Part shown: positions 44,081 through 55,617 of the stretch, in pieces | Numbering within the stretch: the first letter of the stretch is position 1 | Layout of the letters: each line of letters starts with the position of its first letter | Virus record (IMG/VR): IMGVR_UViG_3300023184_000026 | Span: 124,001-188,000 of that record | Strand: one strand, 5' to 3' | DNA length: 64,000 bases | Notes under the pieces: model-generated | What the model saw: only the letters and a program-made list of their open reading frames with translations | Database searches by the model: none | Told to the model about the DNA's origin: nothing | Program-made: the position numbers and the translations under genes

Positions 44081-44950
44081 TTACAATAAATGCGGACGTA
44101 TAGAGTTCCACTTATCTTTTTTACGTTTCATGTACAATGAAGTATTTCCGCCATATAACAAATCTCCAACTCTCAATAGAGAATCAATTTTCATGACAGC
44201 CAATATGTAAATAGTGTTTCTTTTATATATGTGAACACTTTTCACGCCATTCTCTTCGAGAAATCGTTTAAGAAAATTTCCCAACTTTTCTGACACTACA
44301 ACACTAAAGTTGCAACTGGCAATATTGCCAGTTTTAGAAAAAGTACAAGTTATGCAACCATCTCCTTCATATAACCCCAACAGAAAATATCTCACAAGGT
44401 CTGTTGGGACTGGCGGCATTCCAAAATTAAAATAAGTTTTTCCACAACATACGCCAAGATTTTTTAAATCATCATAGATTTTTGCACGTGATATGTCCAA
44501 TATATAAGTTCCACCAGCACGATAAGTTTTTCCGTTTAGTGGAGAAACCATGTCGTGTTCTTTAACGTATCCCAACGGACGAGTGGTTTTTAGTATTTTA
44601 TTTATATCTTGTAAATACGCCACATCATCTTCTTTCAATCTTAAACTCATGTTTTTATTATCTTTACTCATAGTGCCATCCGCAAATATCATCCCAAGAA
44701 TTTGAGCTTTCTCGGGAGTATCTATTTTTTCAAAAAAAGATTCGTCTATGTCATACTTGCTAACAAAACAATTTTTCCTCGTTAGTTTTAACCCCAACCG
44801 TTTCAGTATTTTACTAACAGTTGACGGTGCTATATTGAACCGCGTGGACAAAATATTGTTAGTTGTTTCGGGATTGTTCTTGACAAACTCCGCAATATTA
44901 GTATATACTTCGGGCTGAATTGAATTGGGTCTAAATTTAATATTATTCAT
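44081..44950 (-). mobile_element. double-motif LAGLIDADG homing endonuclease with N-terminal HTH
   Basis: LGMIFADGTM and FLLGLYEGDGCI; start reassigned to ATG at 44950. Confidence 0.85.
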
Positions 44951-45010
44951 GCATATACATATAACAAAATATGGATTTCCACGAATATTATACTTTTTAT
45001 AACAAAATAT

Positions 45011-45622
45011 ATGAATAAAACACTTGACGATCAGATTTGTAATAAGTACCCGAAGATGTTTCGGGACCGTAATAAACCCATGAATGAAACTGCCATGTGT
45101 TGGGGATTCCAGTGCAGCGACGGGTGGTTTAATATTATAGATTCTCTCTGCACGGCACTGACGTATACCTACACAACCTCGGTTAAGGTTGATGCAGAAG
45201 ACGGTAAACGACTGGGAATAGAACCCAGTGTCTATGACAAAAAAACAAACTATTATTGCGAAATAATCCAGCCTCAAGTTGTAGTTAATACCGTAAAAGA
45301 AAAATTCGGTACGCTGCGATTCTATTATCATACTGAACTGGAAGAAAAAATGTCGTACTTGAAAGGGACGGGCAAATATCCGGAACTGGATAAAATACTG
45401 GAACGTTATTACAATTATTTCGACGGCATTGTGCATATGGCTGAAACACTATCTGAACGCACCTGTGAAATTACTGGACAGAACGGTGAACTGCATGTTA
45501 GTGGAGCAAATCGGTCTGGATGGTATAAAACTCTTAATTGTGAATATGCCAAGAATGACCCATTCTGCGTTGATAGAAACTATGTTCCTGTAAGTTCATT
45601 GAATAAAAAAGAAACATCATGA
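45011..45622 (+). CDS. conserved phage hypothetical protein
   Basis: GWFNIIDSLC, VKEKFGTLRFY, CEITG motifs. Confidence 0.7.
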   Translation: MNKTLDDQICNKYPKMFRDRNKPMNETAMCWGFQCSDGWFNIIDSLCTALTYTYTTSVKVDAEDGKRLGIEPSVYDKKTNYYCEIIQPQVVVNTVKEKFGTLRFYYHTELEEKMSYLKGTGKYPELDKILERYYNYFDGIVHMAETLSERTCEITGQNGELHVSGANRSGWYKTLNCEYAKNDPFCVDRNYVPVSSLNKKETS

Positions 45623-48169: not shown

Positions 48170-48206
48170 TTGACATTATATAAAAAGATGTCATTGTGGT
48201 TGGTAT

Positions 48207-49202
48207 ATGAAATACGAACCAACTCTCACCGACATTGCCAACTATGATCGCGTTTTCACCTATTCGTGGGCTTATAGCGACTGGCCCGACCAGAACAAGT
48301 TTGGCGACACTTGGGTTCCAGCCGGTGTGAATGCGTTCGTCAAATGCGCCGCACGTGTTCGCGAAAGTCTAAACGTGCTCAAGCATGACTTTGACTCTGG
48401 CAAAGTTACCATTCACAATATTTGGGACGTGAGTGAGTATGCCAAAAAAATTGGCAAGTTCAAGATGCACAGCAAGGTTGACACCTCGATTGGTGACAAA
48501 GTTGGTCTTCGCGTTGATGGTTCCGCCGATTTGTATAACCTATCTCCAGCAGAAATGGCTATCCGGGTCAACGTGGAATTGTCCAAAATGGGACAACCCC
48601 TGAAGCGTTGTGGCTTAACCACTTGGCAATATCGCGCCGTGTCGGAAACGATTGAAGCATTTGAAGATGGTGCCACAGTGGTTTTGGCTGACATGTGCGC
48701 TCGTTCTGGCAAAACTTTGTATATTGGTGCAACTTTGCTTGAAACTGCGGCACCTATCACGGTTGTTGCAAGTTATGTTCTTACATCGTTTACGAGCGTC
48801 ATTGTTGATTTTTCCGGTTTTGAACAGTTCAAAAACGTGGTTTTTGTTGATAGCAAAGATGTTGACTACAAAAAGCAAGTCAAAGAAGCTCGGGCGGAAG
48901 GAAAGCAAGTTGTTGTTTTCTTGAGTCTTTGTAAGGGCGGTATTTCCGAAAACAAGCGCGAAGAGCGAATTGAGTTTCTGTTTGGTATGCAAGAGCAAGT
49001 GTTACTTGTCGTTGATGAAGCTGATTATGGTGCTTGGAAAGCTGGTCAATGCGATCCTTTAATCAAAAATGTCAGGGACGACGATCTCGTTATTTTGATG
49101 ACTGGCACGAATGCTGATCGTGCTATTGGTGGCTGGAATATTGATGCAGTAGTGCAAGTTACATATCTTGAAATGCTCATGGAGAAGAAAGAATCGCAAT
49201 AA
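48207..49202 (+). CDS. putative nuclease domain plus SF2 helicase N-terminal (RecA1) half
   Basis: YSWAY..PDQNKFGDT (T5orf172/GIY-YIG-like); CARSGKT Walker A; VVDEADYG; LMTGT; own promoter at 48170. Confidence 0.7.
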   Translation: MKYEPTLTDIANYDRVFTYSWAYSDWPDQNKFGDTWVPAGVNAFVKCAARVRESLNVLKHDFDSGKVTIHNIWDVSEYAKKIGKFKMHSKVDTSIGDKVGLRVDGSADLYNLSPAEMAIRVNVELSKMGQPLKRCGLTTWQYRAVSETIEAFEDGATVVLADMCARSGKTLYIGATLLETAAPITVVASYVLTSFTSVIVDFSGFEQFKNVVFVDSKDVDYKKQVKEARAEGKQVVVFLSLCKGGISENKREERIEFLFGMQEQVLLVVDEADYGAWKAGQCDPLIKNVRDDDLVILMTGTNADRAIGGWNIDAVVQVTYLEMLMEKKESQ

Positions 49203-49246
49203 AAAGCCAGCTTGACTTTTATAAAAACACTGACAATATAACTAAT

Positions 49247-50497
49247 ATGAAATTGACCCACTTTGAAATTGATCCATCTCGCCACGCTCTTGTTGTTGAC
49301 GTTGAGTTTTATCAGATGAATTTGAAGAATGTAGTTGATGGTGCTCGTAAAAATGATCCTGAACTATTCAGTGACGAGGGTATTTATCTACCCGCTTGGA
49401 GTAAGTTTGCGAAAAGCCCTATCAAGGCTAAAGGATTTTGGACGTATATGCTGCAATCGGTATTTGATGGTAAGCATGGTTATGACGAGCTTAACTTTGA
49501 TTTTCAACGAAACAGTGTAAATGACTCTGGTGTGTATATGATGTTTATGCCAGGTAATATGAAGATTGTGTGCTTGCGAGAGGCCGCTTTACTTGCTGAG
49601 TCGGCACTTCAAAATTTCTCTGTTGTCGTATTATCTAGCATCAATGGTGTTACAAACGCAAGTGCTCAATCCGATACCAAAGATGCCATTGAACTTGCTC
49701 GACGCAATGGAAAAAAGGTTCTTATTCTATCAACATGCTTGGCACAGCGTTCTTTTAGCGTTGGTGAGATTTCTGGAGTGTTTCTAGCATATGACAATGG
49801 CGAAGCTGGTGCAACTATCCAGAAAATTTCTCGCGGACTCACTCCGTCTGTCGTGGGTAAGATTGGACGAATTGTGAGTCTTTCGTTCGACCCACACCGA
49901 GATGACAAACTGGACAGCTTGATCTTGCAAACCGCCGTCAATTATCAAAAGAGTCACGATATTGCATCTATCAAAGAGGCACTCGCTCTTGTGCTCAAGA
50001 CCGTGGATATTTTCAGTTGCCAAGCTGGCGGTGCCGTAAAGATCGACGTAAGTACATATCTTGAAGAGATCGTTAATCAAGCTCGTATTAGCCGAGTTGT
50101 TGGTCGCATATCATATGTTGATAAGTTGAGTGAAAGTTTGCGTCAAGCATTACTCAATAGCAATTTTAGTCACTACGTTCCTGCAACCGACGAAGTTGCA
50201 CAAAAAGGTAAAGCAATTGCAAAGAAACTCAAAAAAGGCACACCAAAGCAGCAAAAACAGCGAAAGACCGAAGATCAAGAATTGCGTGAAAAAATTGTTG
50301 CATTGTGTGAAAATCTCGATGTTGTAGTGTATGGAACCAACTCAAACAATATGGCGGAAGCAATTAAAGTATTGAAGGTTAGTAAAGAACTTCAAGTTTC
50401 ATTTCAAGATGAAGCTGGTATGCCATATACTGCTCTCAAAGAATTGATTGACAGTGGTGCAATCAACTTGAGTATAATTGAACTTGTTAAATACTGA
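49247..50497 (+). CDS. putative SF2 helicase C-terminal half
   Basis: Follows the RecA1 half; QRSFSV..ISGVFL..D..TIQKISRGLTP resembles helicase motifs V-VI; own promoter at 49212. Confidence 0.5.
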   Translation: MKLTHFEIDPSRHALVVDVEFYQMNLKNVVDGARKNDPELFSDEGIYLPAWSKFAKSPIKAKGFWTYMLQSVFDGKHGYDELNFDFQRNSVNDSGVYMMFMPGNMKIVCLREAALLAESALQNFSVVVLSSINGVTNASAQSDTKDAIELARRNGKKVLILSTCLAQRSFSVGEISGVFLAYDNGEAGATIQKISRGLTPSVVGKIGRIVSLSFDPHRDDKLDSLILQTAVNYQKSHDIASIKEALALVLKTVDIFSCQAGGAVKIDVSTYLEEIVNQARISRVVGRISYVDKLSESLRQALLNSNFSHYVPATDEVAQKGKAIAKKLKKGTPKQQKQRKTEDQELREKIVALCENLDVVVYGTNSNNMAEAIKVLKVSKELQVSFQDEAGMPYTALKELIDSGAINLSIIELVKY

Positions 50498-50541
50498 AAC
50501 ACCTTGACTTTTTATAAATAAGGTTCATTATCTTCTACACT

Positions 50542-51690
50542 ATGAAGAAAGAAAACATGATTTTCCGCTTGAAGATGGAGATTGGCAGTCTCGTGAATGA
50601 GATGGTCGCCAAACTTCCAGATGAACTATTTTCAAGCGATTCTACCACATTCCTCGATCCTAGTATGGGTGGAGGACAATATGTATCAGCAATTGAAAAT
50701 AGGCTTCGCACACACGGTCACACTGATAAAAATATCAAAAGTCGTGTGTTTGGTGTTGAGAAAAATATGCTGCGTGTAAATTATGCAATCAAGAAGAACA
50801 AACTTGTTGGAACATACAGTGTTGACAAGAGTGATGTTCCATCTATACTTATATGTAGTATGAAATTTGATTGTATAGTTGGCAATCCCCCTTATCAAAC
50901 CCAGACTGATGGAAACAGTCGTCCTATCTGGCATTTATTTGTTGAAAGTTCTATTAATACTTTAGAAGATGGTGGGTATCTTTGTTACGTACATCCGTCG
51001 GGCTGGAGGAATGTTGAAGGTAAATTTAAAAATACTGGAAATTTGTTGGCATTGAAAGATGTTCAATATTTAGAAATTCATAATGAAAAAGATGGTATGA
51101 ATACATTTGGTGCAGAAACACGTTACGATTGGTATGTAATGAAAAACATACCATCCAAAAACAAAACCATCGTCAAATTCCAAGATAATGAAATTCGTCA
51201 AGTGGATCTGTCGTCGTTGCCATTTATTCCAAATGGGGAGTTTGATAAAATTTCTGATTTATTAGCAAAAAATGGGGAAGACAAATGCAATGTTCTTTAC
51301 TCGTGCGAGTATCATACTCAACGCGACTATATAAACGATGAAAAAACTCAAAAATTTAAATACCCCGTAATTTATACAGTTGCCAACAAAGATAAACTTA
51401 CTTTTAAATATTCTTCTGTAAAACGCGGTCATTATGGGGAGCCAAAATTGATTTGGAGCAATGGGCGAATTATATCCATTGGGTCACACGTGGACGGCAC
51501 TGGGGAATATGCATTAACTCAGTTTTCTTATGCTTTACTCGACGACGCTAAAAATTTGCCAATTATAAAAAAAGTATTTGATTCACCTTCTTTTAGAAAT
51601 TTAATGGAACATTGCGCCGTTGGCGAATTATCTTTAAATTATAAAGTCCTTGCACTGTTCCGTAAAGACTTCTACAAAGACTTTATATGA
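50542..51690 (+). CDS. Eco57I/TaqI-like N6-adenine DNA methyltransferase with TRD
   Basis: FLDPSMGGG (motif I), IVGNPPY (motif IV), YVHPSGW, KLIWS. Confidence 0.85.
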   Translation: MKKENMIFRLKMEIGSLVNEMVAKLPDELFSSDSTTFLDPSMGGGQYVSAIENRLRTHGHTDKNIKSRVFGVEKNMLRVNYAIKKNKLVGTYSVDKSDVPSILICSMKFDCIVGNPPYQTQTDGNSRPIWHLFVESSINTLEDGGYLCYVHPSGWRNVEGKFKNTGNLLALKDVQYLEIHNEKDGMNTFGAETRYDWYVMKNIPSKNKTIVKFQDNEIRQVDLSSLPFIPNGEFDKISDLLAKNGEDKCNVLYSCEYHTQRDYINDEKTQKFKYPVIYTVANKDKLTFKYSSVKRGHYGEPKLIWSNGRIISIGSHVDGTGEYALTQFSYALLDDAKNLPIIKKVFDSPSFRNLMEHCAVGELSLNYKVLALFRKDFYKDFI

Positions 51691-52118
51691 GTTACAAAAA
51701 GGATCACACTAAAAAAGCAATCAAAGAGCGTGGTGAAGTATTTACACCAGAGTCTTTGGTTGAAGAAATGTTGTCTAAACTACCAGACATATTTTTTACA
51801 TCTGCCGATAAAACTATGTTGGACAATAGTTGTGGCAATGGTAATTTTCTTGCTAAAATATTGGAGTATCGTATGAAGAATGGTATAACGCAAATTGATG
51901 CTCTAAAAACAATATATGGTATTGAACTTGATCCTGTGAATGCAAATGAATGCAGAACTAGATTGAGCCTTGGTAGCAAGGATGTTGAAATATGGAAAGT
52001 GTTGCAGCATAATATTGTTTGTGCTAATGCTCTTGATGCTAATCATAATGGTTGGAATGATGTTGGTTATATGTGGGAAGGCAAAAAGCCACAACAAGAA
52101 TTCTTTACATTTCAGTAA
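51687..52118 (+). CDS. DNA methyltransferase SAM-binding half (motifs X, I, II only)
   Basis: RGEVFTP, LDNSCGNGNF, IYGIEL, NIVCANAL; no NPPY. Confidence 0.8.
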   Translation: MSYKKDHTKKAIKERGEVFTPESLVEEMLSKLPDIFFTSADKTMLDNSCGNGNFLAKILEYRMKNGITQIDALKTIYGIELDPVNANECRTRLSLGSKDVEIWKVLQHNIVCANALDANHNGWNDVGYMWEGKKPQQEFFTFQ

Positions 52119-52154
52119 AATATTTGACAATACGACCGTAAAGTGTAGTATAGT

Positions 52155-52979
52155 TTGATGAAATTTGATTCTATTGTAGGAAATCCGCCATTCAATGCAG
52201 ACCGAAGTGCGGGCAAAGGTTCAACAAGCACATTATGGGATGTGTTTGTTGAACATTCTTTGCATACAATAAAAGATGGTGGATATATTCTTTATGTTCA
52301 TCCTTCAAATTGGAGAAAACCAGATCATTATCTATGGCCGATATTATCTATATATTCCATAAAATATTTGAAAATGTTTTCATTGAATGCATCAAAGAAT
52401 ATCTTTGGAGCAGGAACCAAAGTTGATTTTTATTGTTTGCAAAAACTTGCAGCCAATAAAGACAGCAAAGTTATTGATGCAAACGGTATTGACTGTGAAG
52501 TAAATCTAAAGAAATGGCCATTTTTACCAAACAGTGGGCTTGATACAATCAAAGACATAATAAGTTTAAATCCAGCAGAATGCTGCAATATTTTGTATGA
52601 TACTACATATCATGGTATTCATACAAGCGACGTTGAAACTGCCGATTTTTGTAACAAGGTTGTTCACACCATTCGTCAAGATGGACCAAGATTTAGATAC
52701 TCTCGTATTCGCAATGGACATTATGGTGTCAAGAAAATAATTCTAAATGAAGGTGGTAAATTGTATCCTATAAATGATGCAACTGGTCAATATGCTATGT
52801 CACAAGGCACTTTTGGAATTGTTGTTGATGATGATGCTATTCGTGAAAATATAATGAAAGCATTGCAAAGCAAAGAATTTGAAGAAAAGGTTGTGGAATC
52901 TATCAAATGGGGAATTTATAGAATTGACTATAAGTTCTTTAGACACTTGAAAAAAGACTTTTGGAAAAAATTCGTTTGA
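52155..52979 (+). CDS. DNA methyltransferase catalytic/TRD half
   Basis: Begins MKFDSIVGNPPF; YVHPSNWRK; KKIIL; no motif I; own promoter at 52124. Confidence 0.8.
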   Translation: MMKFDSIVGNPPFNADRSAGKGSTSTLWDVFVEHSLHTIKDGGYILYVHPSNWRKPDHYLWPILSIYSIKYLKMFSLNASKNIFGAGTKVDFYCLQKLAANKDSKVIDANGIDCEVNLKKWPFLPNSGLDTIKDIISLNPAECCNILYDTTYHGIHTSDVETADFCNKVVHTIRQDGPRFRYSRIRNGHYGVKKIILNEGGKLYPINDATGQYAMSQGTFGIVVDDDAIRENIMKALQSKEFEEKVVESIKWGIYRIDYKFFRHLKKDFWKKFV

Positions 52980-54885: not shown

Positions 54886-55617
54886 ATGAGTCTTGAACTA
54901 AATAAAATCTATCACGAAGATTGTTTGGCAACCATGAAAAAGATGCCAGACAACTTTGTTGATTTGGTATTTACTTCACCTCCATATAATATGAACCTGC
55001 GTATTCGCAATGGTAAATATTGTAGCAGACAGATTGTAAAAGAATTTAGCACAAAGTATGATGGCTTTGATGACAACTTGCCTATTGATGATTTTTATAT
55101 CTTACACAGCAAGATTTTGAATGAGTTGCTGCGTGTGAGCAAGATCGTGTTTTATAACATTCAGATTGTTACAGGCAGCAAGGTTGCTTTCTTTCATATG
55201 ATTGGCGACTTTGCTCCATATCTCAAAGACATTATTGTATGGGATAAAAAGCATGGTCAACCTGCTATGCAAAGTGGTGTATTGAATAGGCGCACTGAAC
55301 TTATTTTGATATTTGAAAGAGAATATGCTATTTCACGTCAGTTCAAGAATGCTAAATTTGATCGCGGCACACTTGAAGATATATGGTGTATTGGCAGAGG
55401 TAAAAAGATTTCCAAAAATCATGGAGCAACATTTCCCATTGAACTTGCCAATAAAGTGATGATGAACTTTACCAACAAAGGTGATATAATATATGATCCT
55501 TTTATGGGCAGTGGCACAACCGCTGTGGCAGCAAAACAACATGCTTGTAGTTATATTGGCAGTGAGATCAGTGAAGATTATATAAAAACTGCCAATGACA
55601 GAATAGCAGCATCATAA
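54886..55617 (+). CDS. beta-class N4/N6 DNA methyltransferase
   Basis: FTSPPYN (motif IV) precedes DPFMGSGTT (motif I); HGATFP. Confidence 0.9.
   Translation: MSLELNKIYHEDCLATMKKMPDNFVDLVFTSPPYNMNLRIRNGKYCSRQIVKEFSTKYDGFDDNLPIDDFYILHSKILNELLRVSKIVFYNIQIVTGSKVAFFHMIGDFAPYLKDIIVWDKKHGQPAMQSGVLNRRTELILIFEREYAISRQFKNAKFDRGTLEDIWCIGRGKKISKNHGATFPIELANKVMMNFTNKGDIIYDPFMGSGTTAVAAKQHACSYIGSEISEDYIKTANDRIAAS

What the first reader, a model, noticed from the sequence alone, without database searches (positions are those of the whole stretch)
48170..52979. Restriction-modification-like machine broken into five genes, four with their own early promoter
Seen, in order: nuclease-like + helicase RecA1 (RSGKT, DEAD), a probable helicase C-half, a full N6-MTase-TRD, an MTase SAM half and an MTase NPPF-TRD half. 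TTGAC promoters at 48170, 49212, 50504 and 52124 precede four of them. Established: the same domain order occurs as single large nuclease-helicase-MTase-TRD RM polypeptides in bacteria. Inference: a phage-encoded multisubunit version with two alternative specificities, used for host DNA attack, exclusion of rival phages or self-protection.
Basis: partly seen in the sequence, partly recalled or inferred. Interest (0 to 1): 0.7.

Follow-up and report, generated by a model that had tools for sequence, protein, structure and literature searches.

The report
Modular phage helicase–methyltransferase cassette
A lake jumbo phage carries a conserved set of genes for a DNA motor made of two pieces, a complete adenine DNA methylase and a second methylase made of two pieces; other phages have the same parts partly fused, and the set resembles a restriction-modification enzyme, but nobody has tested what it does.

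Summary
Five + strand genes lie at 48207-52979.

- A is a T5orf172/GIY-YIG-like N-domain plus SF2 RecA1.
- B is SF2 RecA2 plus a helical tail.
- C is a complete TaqI/Eco57I-type N6-adenine methylase.
- D is the SAM-binding half of a methylase.
- E is the NPPF catalytic and target-recognition half.

Four promoter-like TTGAC sites are real members of a genome-wide class placed 34-38 nt before the ATG, which implies leaderless mRNAs.

"Broken" is misleading. In 48 related viral contigs, A and B are one ORF in 16 and two genes in 31, cut at the same point, and this changed at least twice. A C-type methylase follows in 40 contigs and a D-type half in 36. E and D also occur as a conserved two-gene pair without any helicase, and as single circularly permuted proteins. 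Structure searches also find clusters whose members carry helicase and Eco57I-methylase domains together.

So this is a conserved, modular helicase-methylase unit. It is closest to Type ISP enzymes, bacterial DnmA-YeeB-YeeC and the DarB methylase-helicase dyad. Restriction activity is not shown. The nuclease assignment rests on fold and conserved residues only. This is a new variant of a known kind. Interest is moderate to high.

The parts
48170..48198 (+). Promoter-like site before A: TTGACA, then the TATAAA spacer motif. The -10 is weak. The ATG lies 37 nt after the TTGAC.
   Evidence: Sequence. Member of the TTGACW-N2-3-TATAAW class, 9 in the window against 0.37 expected. Genome-wide positional peak.
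48207..49202 (+). Gene A, 331 aa. N-domain of about 1-130 with a T5orf172/GIY-YIG-like fold. SF2 RecA1 domain at 133-329 with motifs Q, I (GKT), Ia, II (DEAD) and III (TGT).
   Evidence: Model pLDDT 90. Z 16-17 to SNF2 enzymes, LlaBIII, EcoP15I Res and SauUSI. AFDB and Atlas matches to T5orf172-ResIII proteins. More than 400 homologues of constant length. Invariant residues.
49212..49240 (+). Promoter-like site before B: TTGACT, TATAAA spacer, AATATA. The ATG lies 35 nt after the TTGAC.
49247..50497 (+). Gene B, 416 aa. SF2 RecA2 domain with motifs IV-VI, plus a helical C-terminal region of about 280-416. It is the second half of the same motor as A.
   Evidence: Model pLDDT 77. Helicase-only fold hits. 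Best Z 11.2 to LlaBIII 418-713. One ORF with A in 16 of 48 related contigs. Collinear junction. Third-codon-position differences in a related strain.
50504..50531 (+). Promoter-like site before C: TTGACT, TATAAA spacer, CATTAT. The ATG lies 38 nt after the TTGAC.
50542..51690 (+). Gene C, 382 aa. Complete gamma-type N6-adenine DNA methyltransferase (motif I DPSMGGGQY, motif IV NPPY) with a C-terminal target-recognition domain.
   Evidence: Pfam Eco57I 2e-13, MTS, N6_Mtase. PHROG 3689 DNA methyltransferase. Follows the helicase genes in 40 of 48 related contigs. Orthologues keep the core and vary in the target-recognition domain.
51687..52118 (+). Gene D, 143 aa. SAM-binding half of a methyltransferase (motifs X 'FTP', I, II, III) with no catalytic NPPY. 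Its start overlaps the stop of C (ATGA).
   Evidence: Pfam N6_Mtase positions 17-105. Large family of stand-alone 100-260-aa proteins, 1700 clusters. Present in 36 of 48 cassettes. 76% identical to the D of a helicase-free E-D pair. Overlap.
52124..52151 (+). Promoter-like site before E: TTGACA, 16 nt, TAGTAT. The ATG lies 34 nt after the TTGAC. It lacks the TATAAA spacer motif.
52158..52979 (+). Gene E, 273 aa from the ATG. Catalytic half (begins at motif IV NPPF) plus target-recognition domain. It has no SAM-binding half. Partner of D.
   Evidence: Pfam Eco57I 2e-7. Orthologues of 271-280 aa down to 40% identity. Adjacent to a D gene in the order E then D in L024, L025 and a Logan contig. 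Homologous to the N-part of the permuted fusion P0388, whose C-part is D-like. 33% identical to C 107-382.

Best explanation
What it is (confidence about 0.8). It is a conserved phage module of separable subunits.
- A and B together form one SF2 DNA translocase that carries an N-terminal T5orf172/GIY-YIG-like domain.
- C is a site-specific N6-adenine methylase.
- D and E assemble non-covalently into a second methylase of the same type. D supplies the SAM pocket. E supplies the catalytic loop and the target reader.

How it most likely works (inferred). The parts are transcribed from host-type promoters as leaderless mRNAs. C and D/E then mark phage DNA with m6A at their sites. A methylase bound at an unmarked site recruits the A/B motor. 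The motor pulls DNA using ATP, as Type ISP and Type III enzymes do. The T5orf172-like domain nicks or cuts DNA that lacks the mark. Such DNA would be the host chromosome or a rival phage. On this reading it is a restriction-modification-like self/non-self device carried by a virulent phage.
For: Parts:
- Pfam, PHROG and fold results for all five proteins.
- Invariant ATPase motifs I, II, III, V and VI.

One motor:
- A and B are a single 736-777-aa ORF in 16 of 48 related contigs, cut at the same linker in the other 31. The state changed at least twice on the tree.

Motor and methylase belong together:
- A C-type methylase is adjacent in 40 of 48 contigs, with order conserved, including cyanophage S-CAM7 at about 30% identity.
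- Structure-search clusters combine ResIII with Eco57I (plus T5orf172 in the viral one), or a B-like fold with Eco57I. A 1138-aa phage 'Eco57I methylase' is among the top seven matches to A.

Restriction-modification-like:
- LlaBIII (Type ISP) is the best or near-best solved match for both halves. EcoP15I Res, HsdR and SauUSI follow.

N-domain probably catalytic:
- Y19, W21, K31, G33, K59 and D92 are invariant.
- Positions 34 and 108 are always acidic, position 110 is H or Y, and N122 is in 35 of 37.
- This matches the Y...K-[IF]-G...R...E-x-[HF] pattern of T5orf172.

D+E as one enzyme:
- Their motif content is complementary.
- They are adjacent in both orders.
- Permuted fusion proteins exist.
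- D is 76% conserved against E at 48%.

Not pseudogenes:
- Orthologues have constant length.
- Differences in a related strain fall at third codon positions, with paired indels that keep the frame.

Promoters.
Against: - No activity was measured.
- The N-domain is not recognised by the Pfam T5orf172 or GIY-YIG models, and hhalign gave P = 0.046 and probability 1%. A purely DNA-binding role is therefore possible.
- The bacterial analogue DnmA-YeeB-YeeC did not restrict phage or transformation in B. subtilis (PMC9973331).
- PADLOC has no model that matches A or B.
- The one complex prediction (B+D+C) gave 'no answer', so no physical contact between motor and methylase is shown.
- Arrays of up to five C paralogues fit protective multi-specific methylation at least as well as restriction.
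- The role of D beside a full-length C is unexplained.
Confidence: 0.42

Rival explanations
1. Protective methylation only, in the manner of the DarB dyad. The A/B motor moves the methylases quickly along the phage DNA so that it is marked before host restriction enzymes act. The T5orf172-like domain only binds DNA. Nothing is cut.
For: - The methylase plus SWI2/SNF2-helicase dyad of P1 DarB protects DNA against Type I restriction (PMC5512222).
- The best matches of A are SNF2-family translocases.
- Arrays of 2-5 methylases with different target-recognition domains, and a third, beta-class methylase nearby, look like a multi-specific shield.
- Host-type promoters suit early protection.
- T5orf172 was first described as a DNA-binding domain (PMC9973331 cites this).
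Against: - DarB-type dyads have the order methylase then helicase and an LPD36 domain, are fused, and are packaged in the virion (PMC5512222). None of this is seen here.
- The strict invariance of polar and acidic residues in the N-domain of A is more typical of a catalytic site.
- Bacterial gene sets with T5orf172, helicase and MmeI-type methylase sit in defence islands (PMC9973331).
Confidence: 0.33
2. Neighbours without a common job. A/B is a replication, recombination or repair helicase of the phage, and the methylases are independent anti-restriction genes that merely travel with it.
For: - T5orf172 proteins have been proposed to act in recombination (PMC7824862).
- E-D pairs exist without any helicase.
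- A and B are more GC-rich than C-E, which hints at separate histories.
- Five of 48 contigs with room show no C next to A/B.
Against: - The order A-B-C is kept in 40 of 48 contigs, down to about 30% identity.
- Clusters whose members carry both this helicase type and Eco57I methylase domains occur in phages and bacteria.
- None of the flanking genes tested is shared across the first 21 related loci, apart from a beta-class methylase in two of them.
Confidence: 0.12
3. Decaying remnant. A once single restriction-modification gene has been broken by stop codons, and its pieces are no longer functional.
For: D and E lie in the same reading frame, 36 nt apart. Half-proteins look like fragments.
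Against: - Three different stop codons and a promoter lie between D and E.
- E orthologues keep 271-280 aa down to 40% identity, and D-type proteins form a family of 1700 clusters.
- A and B orthologues have constant lengths.
- Catalytic motifs are invariant.
- A related strain differs mainly at third codon positions.
Confidence: 0.03

Closest known systems
Type ISP restriction-modification enzymes (LlaGI, LlaBIII)
   Same: Order nuclease, SF2 motor, gamma-type N6-adenine methylase, target-recognition domain. LlaBIII is the best solved match of B (Z 11.2) and a top match of A (Z 16.4).
   Different: Type ISP is one polypeptide with an Mrr (PD-(D/E)xK) nuclease. Here there are three to five polypeptides, and the N-domain has a T5orf172/GIY-YIG-like fold. 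There is also an extra split methylase and a stand-alone SAM-binding half. The host here is a phage, not a plasmid or chromosome.
DnmA-YeeB-YeeC gene cluster of Bacillus subtilis and other bacteria (PMC9973331, PMC7261158)
   Same: The same three functions as separate genes: an MmeI/Eco57I-type adenine methylase, an SF2 helicase and a T5orf172/GIY-YIG protein, with conserved synteny.
   Different: The order there is methylase, helicase, T5orf172 protein, and the T5orf172 domain is at the C-terminus of its own protein. Here T5orf172 is fused to RecA1 and the helicase itself is cut in two. No sequence-level link was tested. No restriction was found for the Bacillus cluster.
DarB-type methylase-helicase dyad of phage P1 and polyvalent proteins (PMC5512222)
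   Same: A phage-borne pairing of a TaqI/EcoKI-like adenine methylase with an SF2 (SNF2-like) translocase, thought to act on DNA soon after entry.
   Different: DarB is one giant virion protein with the order LPD36, methylase, helicase, and no nuclease-like domain. Here the genes are separate, ordered helicase then methylase, and lie behind host-type promoters, among non-structural genes on the flanks examined (44-57 kb).
Natural two-subunit DNA methyltransferases M.AquI and M.EcoHK31I (cited in PMC3404938, PMC2836561)
   Same: One methylase fold made from two polypeptides encoded by neighbouring genes.
   Different: Those are C5-cytosine enzymes. D/E is an N6-adenine enzyme cut between motifs III and IV. 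It occurs in both gene orders and is also found as a circularly permuted single chain.
Phage proteins of PHROG 22930 and Synechococcus phages S-CAM7 and ACG-2014f
   Same: Direct relatives. S-CAM7 has the split A, B, C, D set. ACG-2014f has a 691-aa protein that matches A by fold. A matches PHROG 22930, a 691-position profile.
   Different: All are annotated as hypothetical, and none has been studied. S-CAM7 has no E.

Membership tests
SF2 helicase/translocase superfamily | RecA1 domain with motifs I (GKT), II (DExx) and III | tested here: met
   A 133-329 scores Z 16-17 to SNF2, LlaBIII and EcoP15I Res. G168-K169-T170, D270-E271-A272-D273 and T299-G300-T301 are invariant.
SF2 helicase/translocase superfamily | RecA2 domain with motifs IV-VI, including the arginine of motif VI | tested here: met
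   B 12-278 scores Z 10-11 to LlaBIII, SauUSI, HsdR and DEAD-box C-domains. Q167-R168-S169-F170-S171, Q192 and R196 are invariant.
Type ISP restriction-modification enzymes | All functions in a single polypeptide | tested here: not met
   Five separate ORFs with stop codons and promoters between them. None of 48 related contigs fuses A-B with C.
Type ISP restriction-modification enzymes | N-terminal Mrr-type PD-(D/E)xK nuclease | tested here: not met
   The N-domain of A matches T5orf172/GIY-YIG-annotated proteins by fold and by features. There is no PD-(D/E)xK hit.
Type ISP restriction-modification enzymes | ATP-driven translocation with cleavage on collision, and hemimethylation for protection | not testable with these tools
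   This needs biochemistry.
T5orf172 / MUG113 (Pfam PF10544, GIY-YIG superfamily) | Match to the family profile | tested here: not met
   The PF10544 search of the phage's own genome finds another ORF, not A. No hit in 37 A homologues or in 10 fused or split relatives.
T5orf172 / MUG113 (Pfam PF10544, GIY-YIG superfamily) | Remote homology or shared fold with family members | tested here: inconclusive
   hhalign against 22 T5orf172 domains gave P 0.046 and probability 1%, with motifs in the right order. Fold matches cover A 11-330 in proteins annotated T5orf172 or GIY-YIG. Atlas clusters of fused relatives carry PF10544 in 13-68% of members. Feature score 0.87, a lead only.
Gamma-type (TaqI/Eco57I-like) N6-adenine DNA methyltransferases | SAM-binding motif I and catalytic motif IV (NPPY/F), followed by a C-terminal target-recognition domain | tested here: met
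   C matches Eco57I at 2e-13 and has DPSMGGGQY and NPPY. D+E together have motifs X and I-III in D, and NPPF plus the target-recognition domain in E. C lacks the 'FTP' of motif X.
DnmA-YeeB-YeeC type clusters | MmeI-family methylase next to an SF2 helicase and a T5orf172 protein | tested here: inconclusive
   The three functions are present and linked. Pfam MmeI_Mtase is not hit by C of the window, only faintly by the S-CAM7 orthologue. Direct comparison with YeeB and YeeC was not done.
DarB-type methylase-helicase dyad | LPD36-methylase-SNF2 helicase fused in a virion-packaged polyvalent protein | tested here: not met
   Separate genes in the order helicase then methylase. Neighbours are ThyX, a homing endonuclease and another methylase, not virion genes.
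Known anti-phage defence systems (PADLOC-DB 2.0) | Match of the motor subunits to a defence-system model | tested here: not met
   No PADLOC hit for A or B. C, D and E match only generic methylase models and mad2, weakly.

The most novel reading that the evidence does not exclude
A virulent phage with ordinary bases uses m6A as its own self-mark to shred host or rival DNA. This would be the functional counterpart of T4's hydroxymethylcytosine plus EndoII/IV. The machine would assemble in trans from exchangeable parts: a split motor (A+B), several catalytic/target-reading subunits (C paralogues, E), and D as a shared SAM-binding subunit that licenses or regulates them. Specificity could then be re-dealt by gene shuffling.
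Probability: 0.15. Interest if true: 0.8.

Novelty: new variant of a known kind. Interest (0 to 1): 0.6.

Why it matters
The cassette is common in aquatic phages. Each of A and B has hundreds of metagenomic homologues, and the set occurs in cultured cyanophage S-CAM7, yet every member is annotated as hypothetical.

If it restricts DNA, it would be a phage-borne restriction-modification-like weapon of a new build. It would also give a way for phages without modified bases to tell their own DNA from the host's. If it only protects, it is an unfused, early-expressed cousin of DarB.

Either way it offers three things:
- natural, repeatedly evolved split points in an SF2 motor and in an adenine methylase, which are useful for split-enzyme design;
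- a family of stand-alone SAM-binding half-proteins whose role is open;
- a clear case of a leaderless promoter class in a lake jumbo phage.

Tried and rejected
- Near-identity DNA search of the region against GenBank phages found nothing. A protein-level search found only S-CAM7.
- Sequence and profile searches of A and B against PDB found nothing useful.
- PADLOC and NCBIfam have nothing for A or B.
- Read-through or recoded stop between D and E was rejected. TAA, TGA and TAG all occur in the 36-nt gap, a promoter lies there, and E orthologues start at the same Met.
- The pseudogene reading was rejected.
- The 272-aa gene upstream of E in L024 is not a second E-type half.
- A search for a separate E-type gene in five partial related phage records found only their C gene.
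- A search of 185,579 species genomes for B found one 5-kb MAG contig. The family is essentially viral at this sensitivity.
- hhalign of the N-domain of A against T5orf172 was not significant.
- Complex prediction on B+D+C returned the verdict 'no answer'. The score stayed at 0.45 when B was replaced and D kept. It is not used as evidence. At most it is a lead for pairing C with D alone.
- Metatranscriptome contigs touch A, the A/B junction, B, D, the D/E junction and E. DNA carry-over cannot be excluded, and no transcript starts could be read.
- No full A-B-C fusion was found among the 48 viral contigs. The 1138-aa BFVD hit could not be inspected residue by residue.


Full report
**Source and setting**

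The window is bases 124001-188000 of a 297,258-bp IMG/VR virus record. CheckV estimates it as complete, and its GC content is 37%. The same DNA, or a strain of it, is held by many lake and freshwater metagenomes from 2017 to 2024. No tRNA gene lies in the window.

The neighbours of the finding are:
- a LAGLIDADG homing endonuclease on the minus strand;
- ThyX;
- a beta-class N6/N4 DNA methylase;
- a GT9-like glycosyltransferase.

None of the flanking genes tested recurs next to the cassette in the first 21 related loci, except the beta-class methylase in two of them.

**The observation**

Five + strand ORFs fill 48207-52979.

*A (331 aa).*
Both are invariant in 37 homologues, together with a TGT motif III.
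- Its model (pLDDT 90) shows residues 133-329 as an SF2 RecA1 domain. The Z-score is 16-17 to SNF2-family motors, to the Type ISP enzyme LlaBIII, and to ZorD, EcoP15I Res and SauUSI.

*B (416 aa).*
- It has no Pfam or PHROG family.
- Its model (pLDDT 77) is matched only by helicases. Isolated RecA2 domains match at probability 1.0.
- In the second-look alignment, residues 12-278 match LlaBIII 418-713 best (Z 11.2), followed by SauUSI, Rad5 and HsdR.
- Its motifs V and VI are invariant.

*C (382 aa).* It is a complete Eco57I/TaqI-type adenine methylase with motif I and NPPY.

*D (143 aa).* It covers only the first third of the N6_Mtase profile: motifs X and I-III.

*E.* It begins exactly at motif IV (NPPF) and continues through a target-recognition domain. 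Its real start is ATG 52158, because its orthologues are 273 aa long.

**The N-domain of A**

No sequence model recognises it. A profile-profile comparison with 22 T5orf172 domains is not significant, although the motifs line up in order.

Three lines of weaker evidence point to T5orf172:
- In AlphaFold DB clusters, residues 11-330 of A align to the N-termini of 720-1170-aa bacterial proteins annotated as GIY-YIG nuclease, T5 Orf172 DNA-binding, or ResIII.
- In the ESM Atlas, both A and B match viral clusters of 719-748 aa in which 13-68% of members carry Pfam T5orf172.
- The protein-language-model search for residues 1-135 returns T5orf172/MUG113 clusters. Its score is only lead-level.

Conserved residues fit the T5orf172 pattern. 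Y19, W21, K31, G33, K59 and D92 are invariant. Positions 34 and 108 are always acidic. Position 110 is H or Y. N122 occurs in 35 of 37 sequences.

I call the domain T5orf172-like by fold. Whether it cuts DNA is an inference.

**A and B are one motor**

- In 48 related IMG/VR contigs, A and B are one ORF in 16 and two genes in 31, one of which has the order B-C-A-D (first seen).
- In the fused forms, the end of A and the start of B are joined by about ten residues at the very point where the window has a stop, a promoter and a start.
- On a tree of the B part, fused and split forms are interspersed. Well-supported branches force at least two changes.
- Both A and B have hundreds of metagenomic homologues of constant length.
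- A related lake strain differs from the window in B almost only at third codon positions. Its few indels come in frame-restoring pairs.

The split is therefore old, recurrent and under selection. It is not damage.

**The cassette**

- A C-type methylase lies next to the helicase genes in 40 of the 48 contigs. Three contigs have no room, and five lack it despite having room.
- A D-type half-methylase is present in 36.
- Cyanophage S-CAM7 has the same A, B, C, D order at about 30% identity.
- The number of methylases varies. Arrangements seen are C-D, C-D-C and C-D-C-C. One contig has five tandem C paralogues, with nearly identical cores and different target-recognition domains, followed by D.
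- Fusion evidence ties motor and methylase together:
  - a viral Atlas cluster of 901 aa carries ResIII, T5orf172 and Eco57I;
  - bacterial clusters of 896 and 994 aa carry ResIII and Eco57I;
  - a 744-aa bacterial cluster joins a B-like fold to Eco57I;
  - a 1138-aa 'Eco57I methylase' of an uncultured phage matches A, and has about the summed length of A+B+C.
- The B family is nearly absent from one-genome-per-species bacterial collections at the sensitivity used.

**D and E are a split methylase with a life of its own**

- E has orthologues of 271-280 aa down to 40% identity. More distant relatives are full-length enzymes.
- In T4-like contigs these E genes are followed by an overlapping D gene. 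The order is E then D, and no helicase is nearby.
- That D is 76% identical to the window's D, while the E is 48% identical.
- The D family has about 1700 clusters at 50% identity. Most are stand-alone proteins of 100-260 aa.
- In the few long members, the D domain sits at the C-terminus, after an NPPY/Eco57I part.
- P0388 aligns to E over its first 261 residues and to D over 344-450. It is a circularly permuted single-chain version.
- The gap between D and E holds TAA, TGA and TAG as well as a promoter, so read-through is not the explanation.
- C and E are paralogues, 33% identical and collinear through the target-recognition domain. Different specificities are likely but untested.

**Promoters**

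- Genome-wide, TTGACW sits 34-39 nt before ORF start codons far more often than control hexamers do.
- Fifty such sites share an extended form: TTGACW, a TATAAA tract, then a CAT(A/T)(G/C)T-like -10. They cluster at 153-213 kb before small ORFs.
- The extended motif occurs 9 times in the window against 0.37 expected.
- The sites before A, B and C, and one at 52976 before the next gene, belong to this class. The site before E is a plain TTGACA-16-TAGTAT.
- With 6+17+6+6 nt between the TTGAC and the ATG, there is no room for a leader or a ribosome-binding site. Leaderless mRNAs are therefore implied.
- D starts inside the stop of C.
- The transcription units are therefore A, B, C-D and E.
- 'Early' rests on the host-type -35 and on the company of small ORFs. 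It is an inference.
- RNA-library contigs cover parts of A, B, D, E and both junctions, but they cannot show transcript starts or exclude DNA carry-over.

**Mechanism and rivals**

Shown:
- the identity of the parts;
- the unity of A+B and of D+E;
- the conserved linkage of motor and methylase.

Inferred:
- that they act as one machine on DNA;
- that the N-domain cuts.

I favour a restriction-modification-like device, Type ISP-like in logic (0.42). On this reading, m6A marks phage DNA, and unmarked DNA bound by a methylase subunit is reeled in and nicked.

The main rival (0.33) is protective methylation helped by a motor, as proposed for the DarB methylase-helicase dyad (PMC5512222). The arrays of methylases fit it well.

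The bacterial set with the same three functions, DnmA-YeeB-YeeC, is conserved and sits in defence islands, but it showed no restriction in B. subtilis (PMC9973331). This cuts both ways.

Independent functions (0.12) and decay (0.03) are unlikely. The single complex prediction gave no verdict.

**Open points**

- Why does D accompany a full-length C that has its own motif I, even where no E exists? C lacks the 'FTP' motif X that D has.
- Why does GC fall from A (0.45) to E (0.33)?
- Which parts are fused in the 901- and 1138-aa phage proteins?

**Verdict**

This is a new, widespread, modular variant of the helicase-methylase and Type ISP theme. It is not a broken gene. Interest 0.6.

Noticed in passing
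Whole genome. In the window: 27290, 31519, 32213, 33566, 38212, 48170, 49212, 50504, 52976: A phage promoter class TTGACW-N2-3-TATAAW with a CAT(A/T)(G/C)T-like -10 and the ORF ATG 33-40 nt after the TTGAC. There are 50 sites, mostly at genome 153-213 kb and before 50-130-aa ORFs. There is no room for a leader or Shine-Dalgarno sequence, so leaderless mRNAs are implied.
   Followed up: partly
window 54886-55617 (+): A third DNA methylase, beta-class N6/N4 (Pfam N6_N4_Mtase 5e-34, SPPY motif), lies 1.9 kb downstream of the cassette. A homologue lies near the cassette in L019, and a faint one in S-CAM7.
   Followed up: partly
window 44081-45058 (-): A LAGLIDADG homing endonuclease with an HTH domain. 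It sits within a longer mechanical ORF, on the strand opposite to its neighbours.
   Followed up: no
L018 / L061 (IMGVR_UViG_3300025139_000012), about 3300-10200 of L018: Five tandem C-type methylase genes. Their first 110 or so residues are nearly identical and their target-recognition domains differ. They are followed by one D gene. This looks like a multi-specificity array.
   Followed up: partly
window 48207-52979: A GC gradient along the cassette: A 0.449 (GC3 0.44), B 0.407, C 0.355, D 0.343, E 0.331, against 0.371 for the genome. It may reflect separate origins of the motor and the methylases.
   Followed up: no
G000:C1:83703-83915 (outside the window; locus L027): The phage has a separate ORF (292 aa open frame) that does pass the Pfam T5orf172 threshold, unlike gene A.
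   Followed up: no
L074, L075, L077, L098: Variant cassettes. Three contigs have A, B and D but no detectable C. One contig has a D-like 177-aa gene directly after the end of A.
   Followed up: no
window 48861-48893: A 33-nt stretch inside gene A is matched by short contigs of three runs, and those contigs continue into unrelated sequence on both sides. It is probably a conserved patch of related genes in other phages.
   Followed up: no
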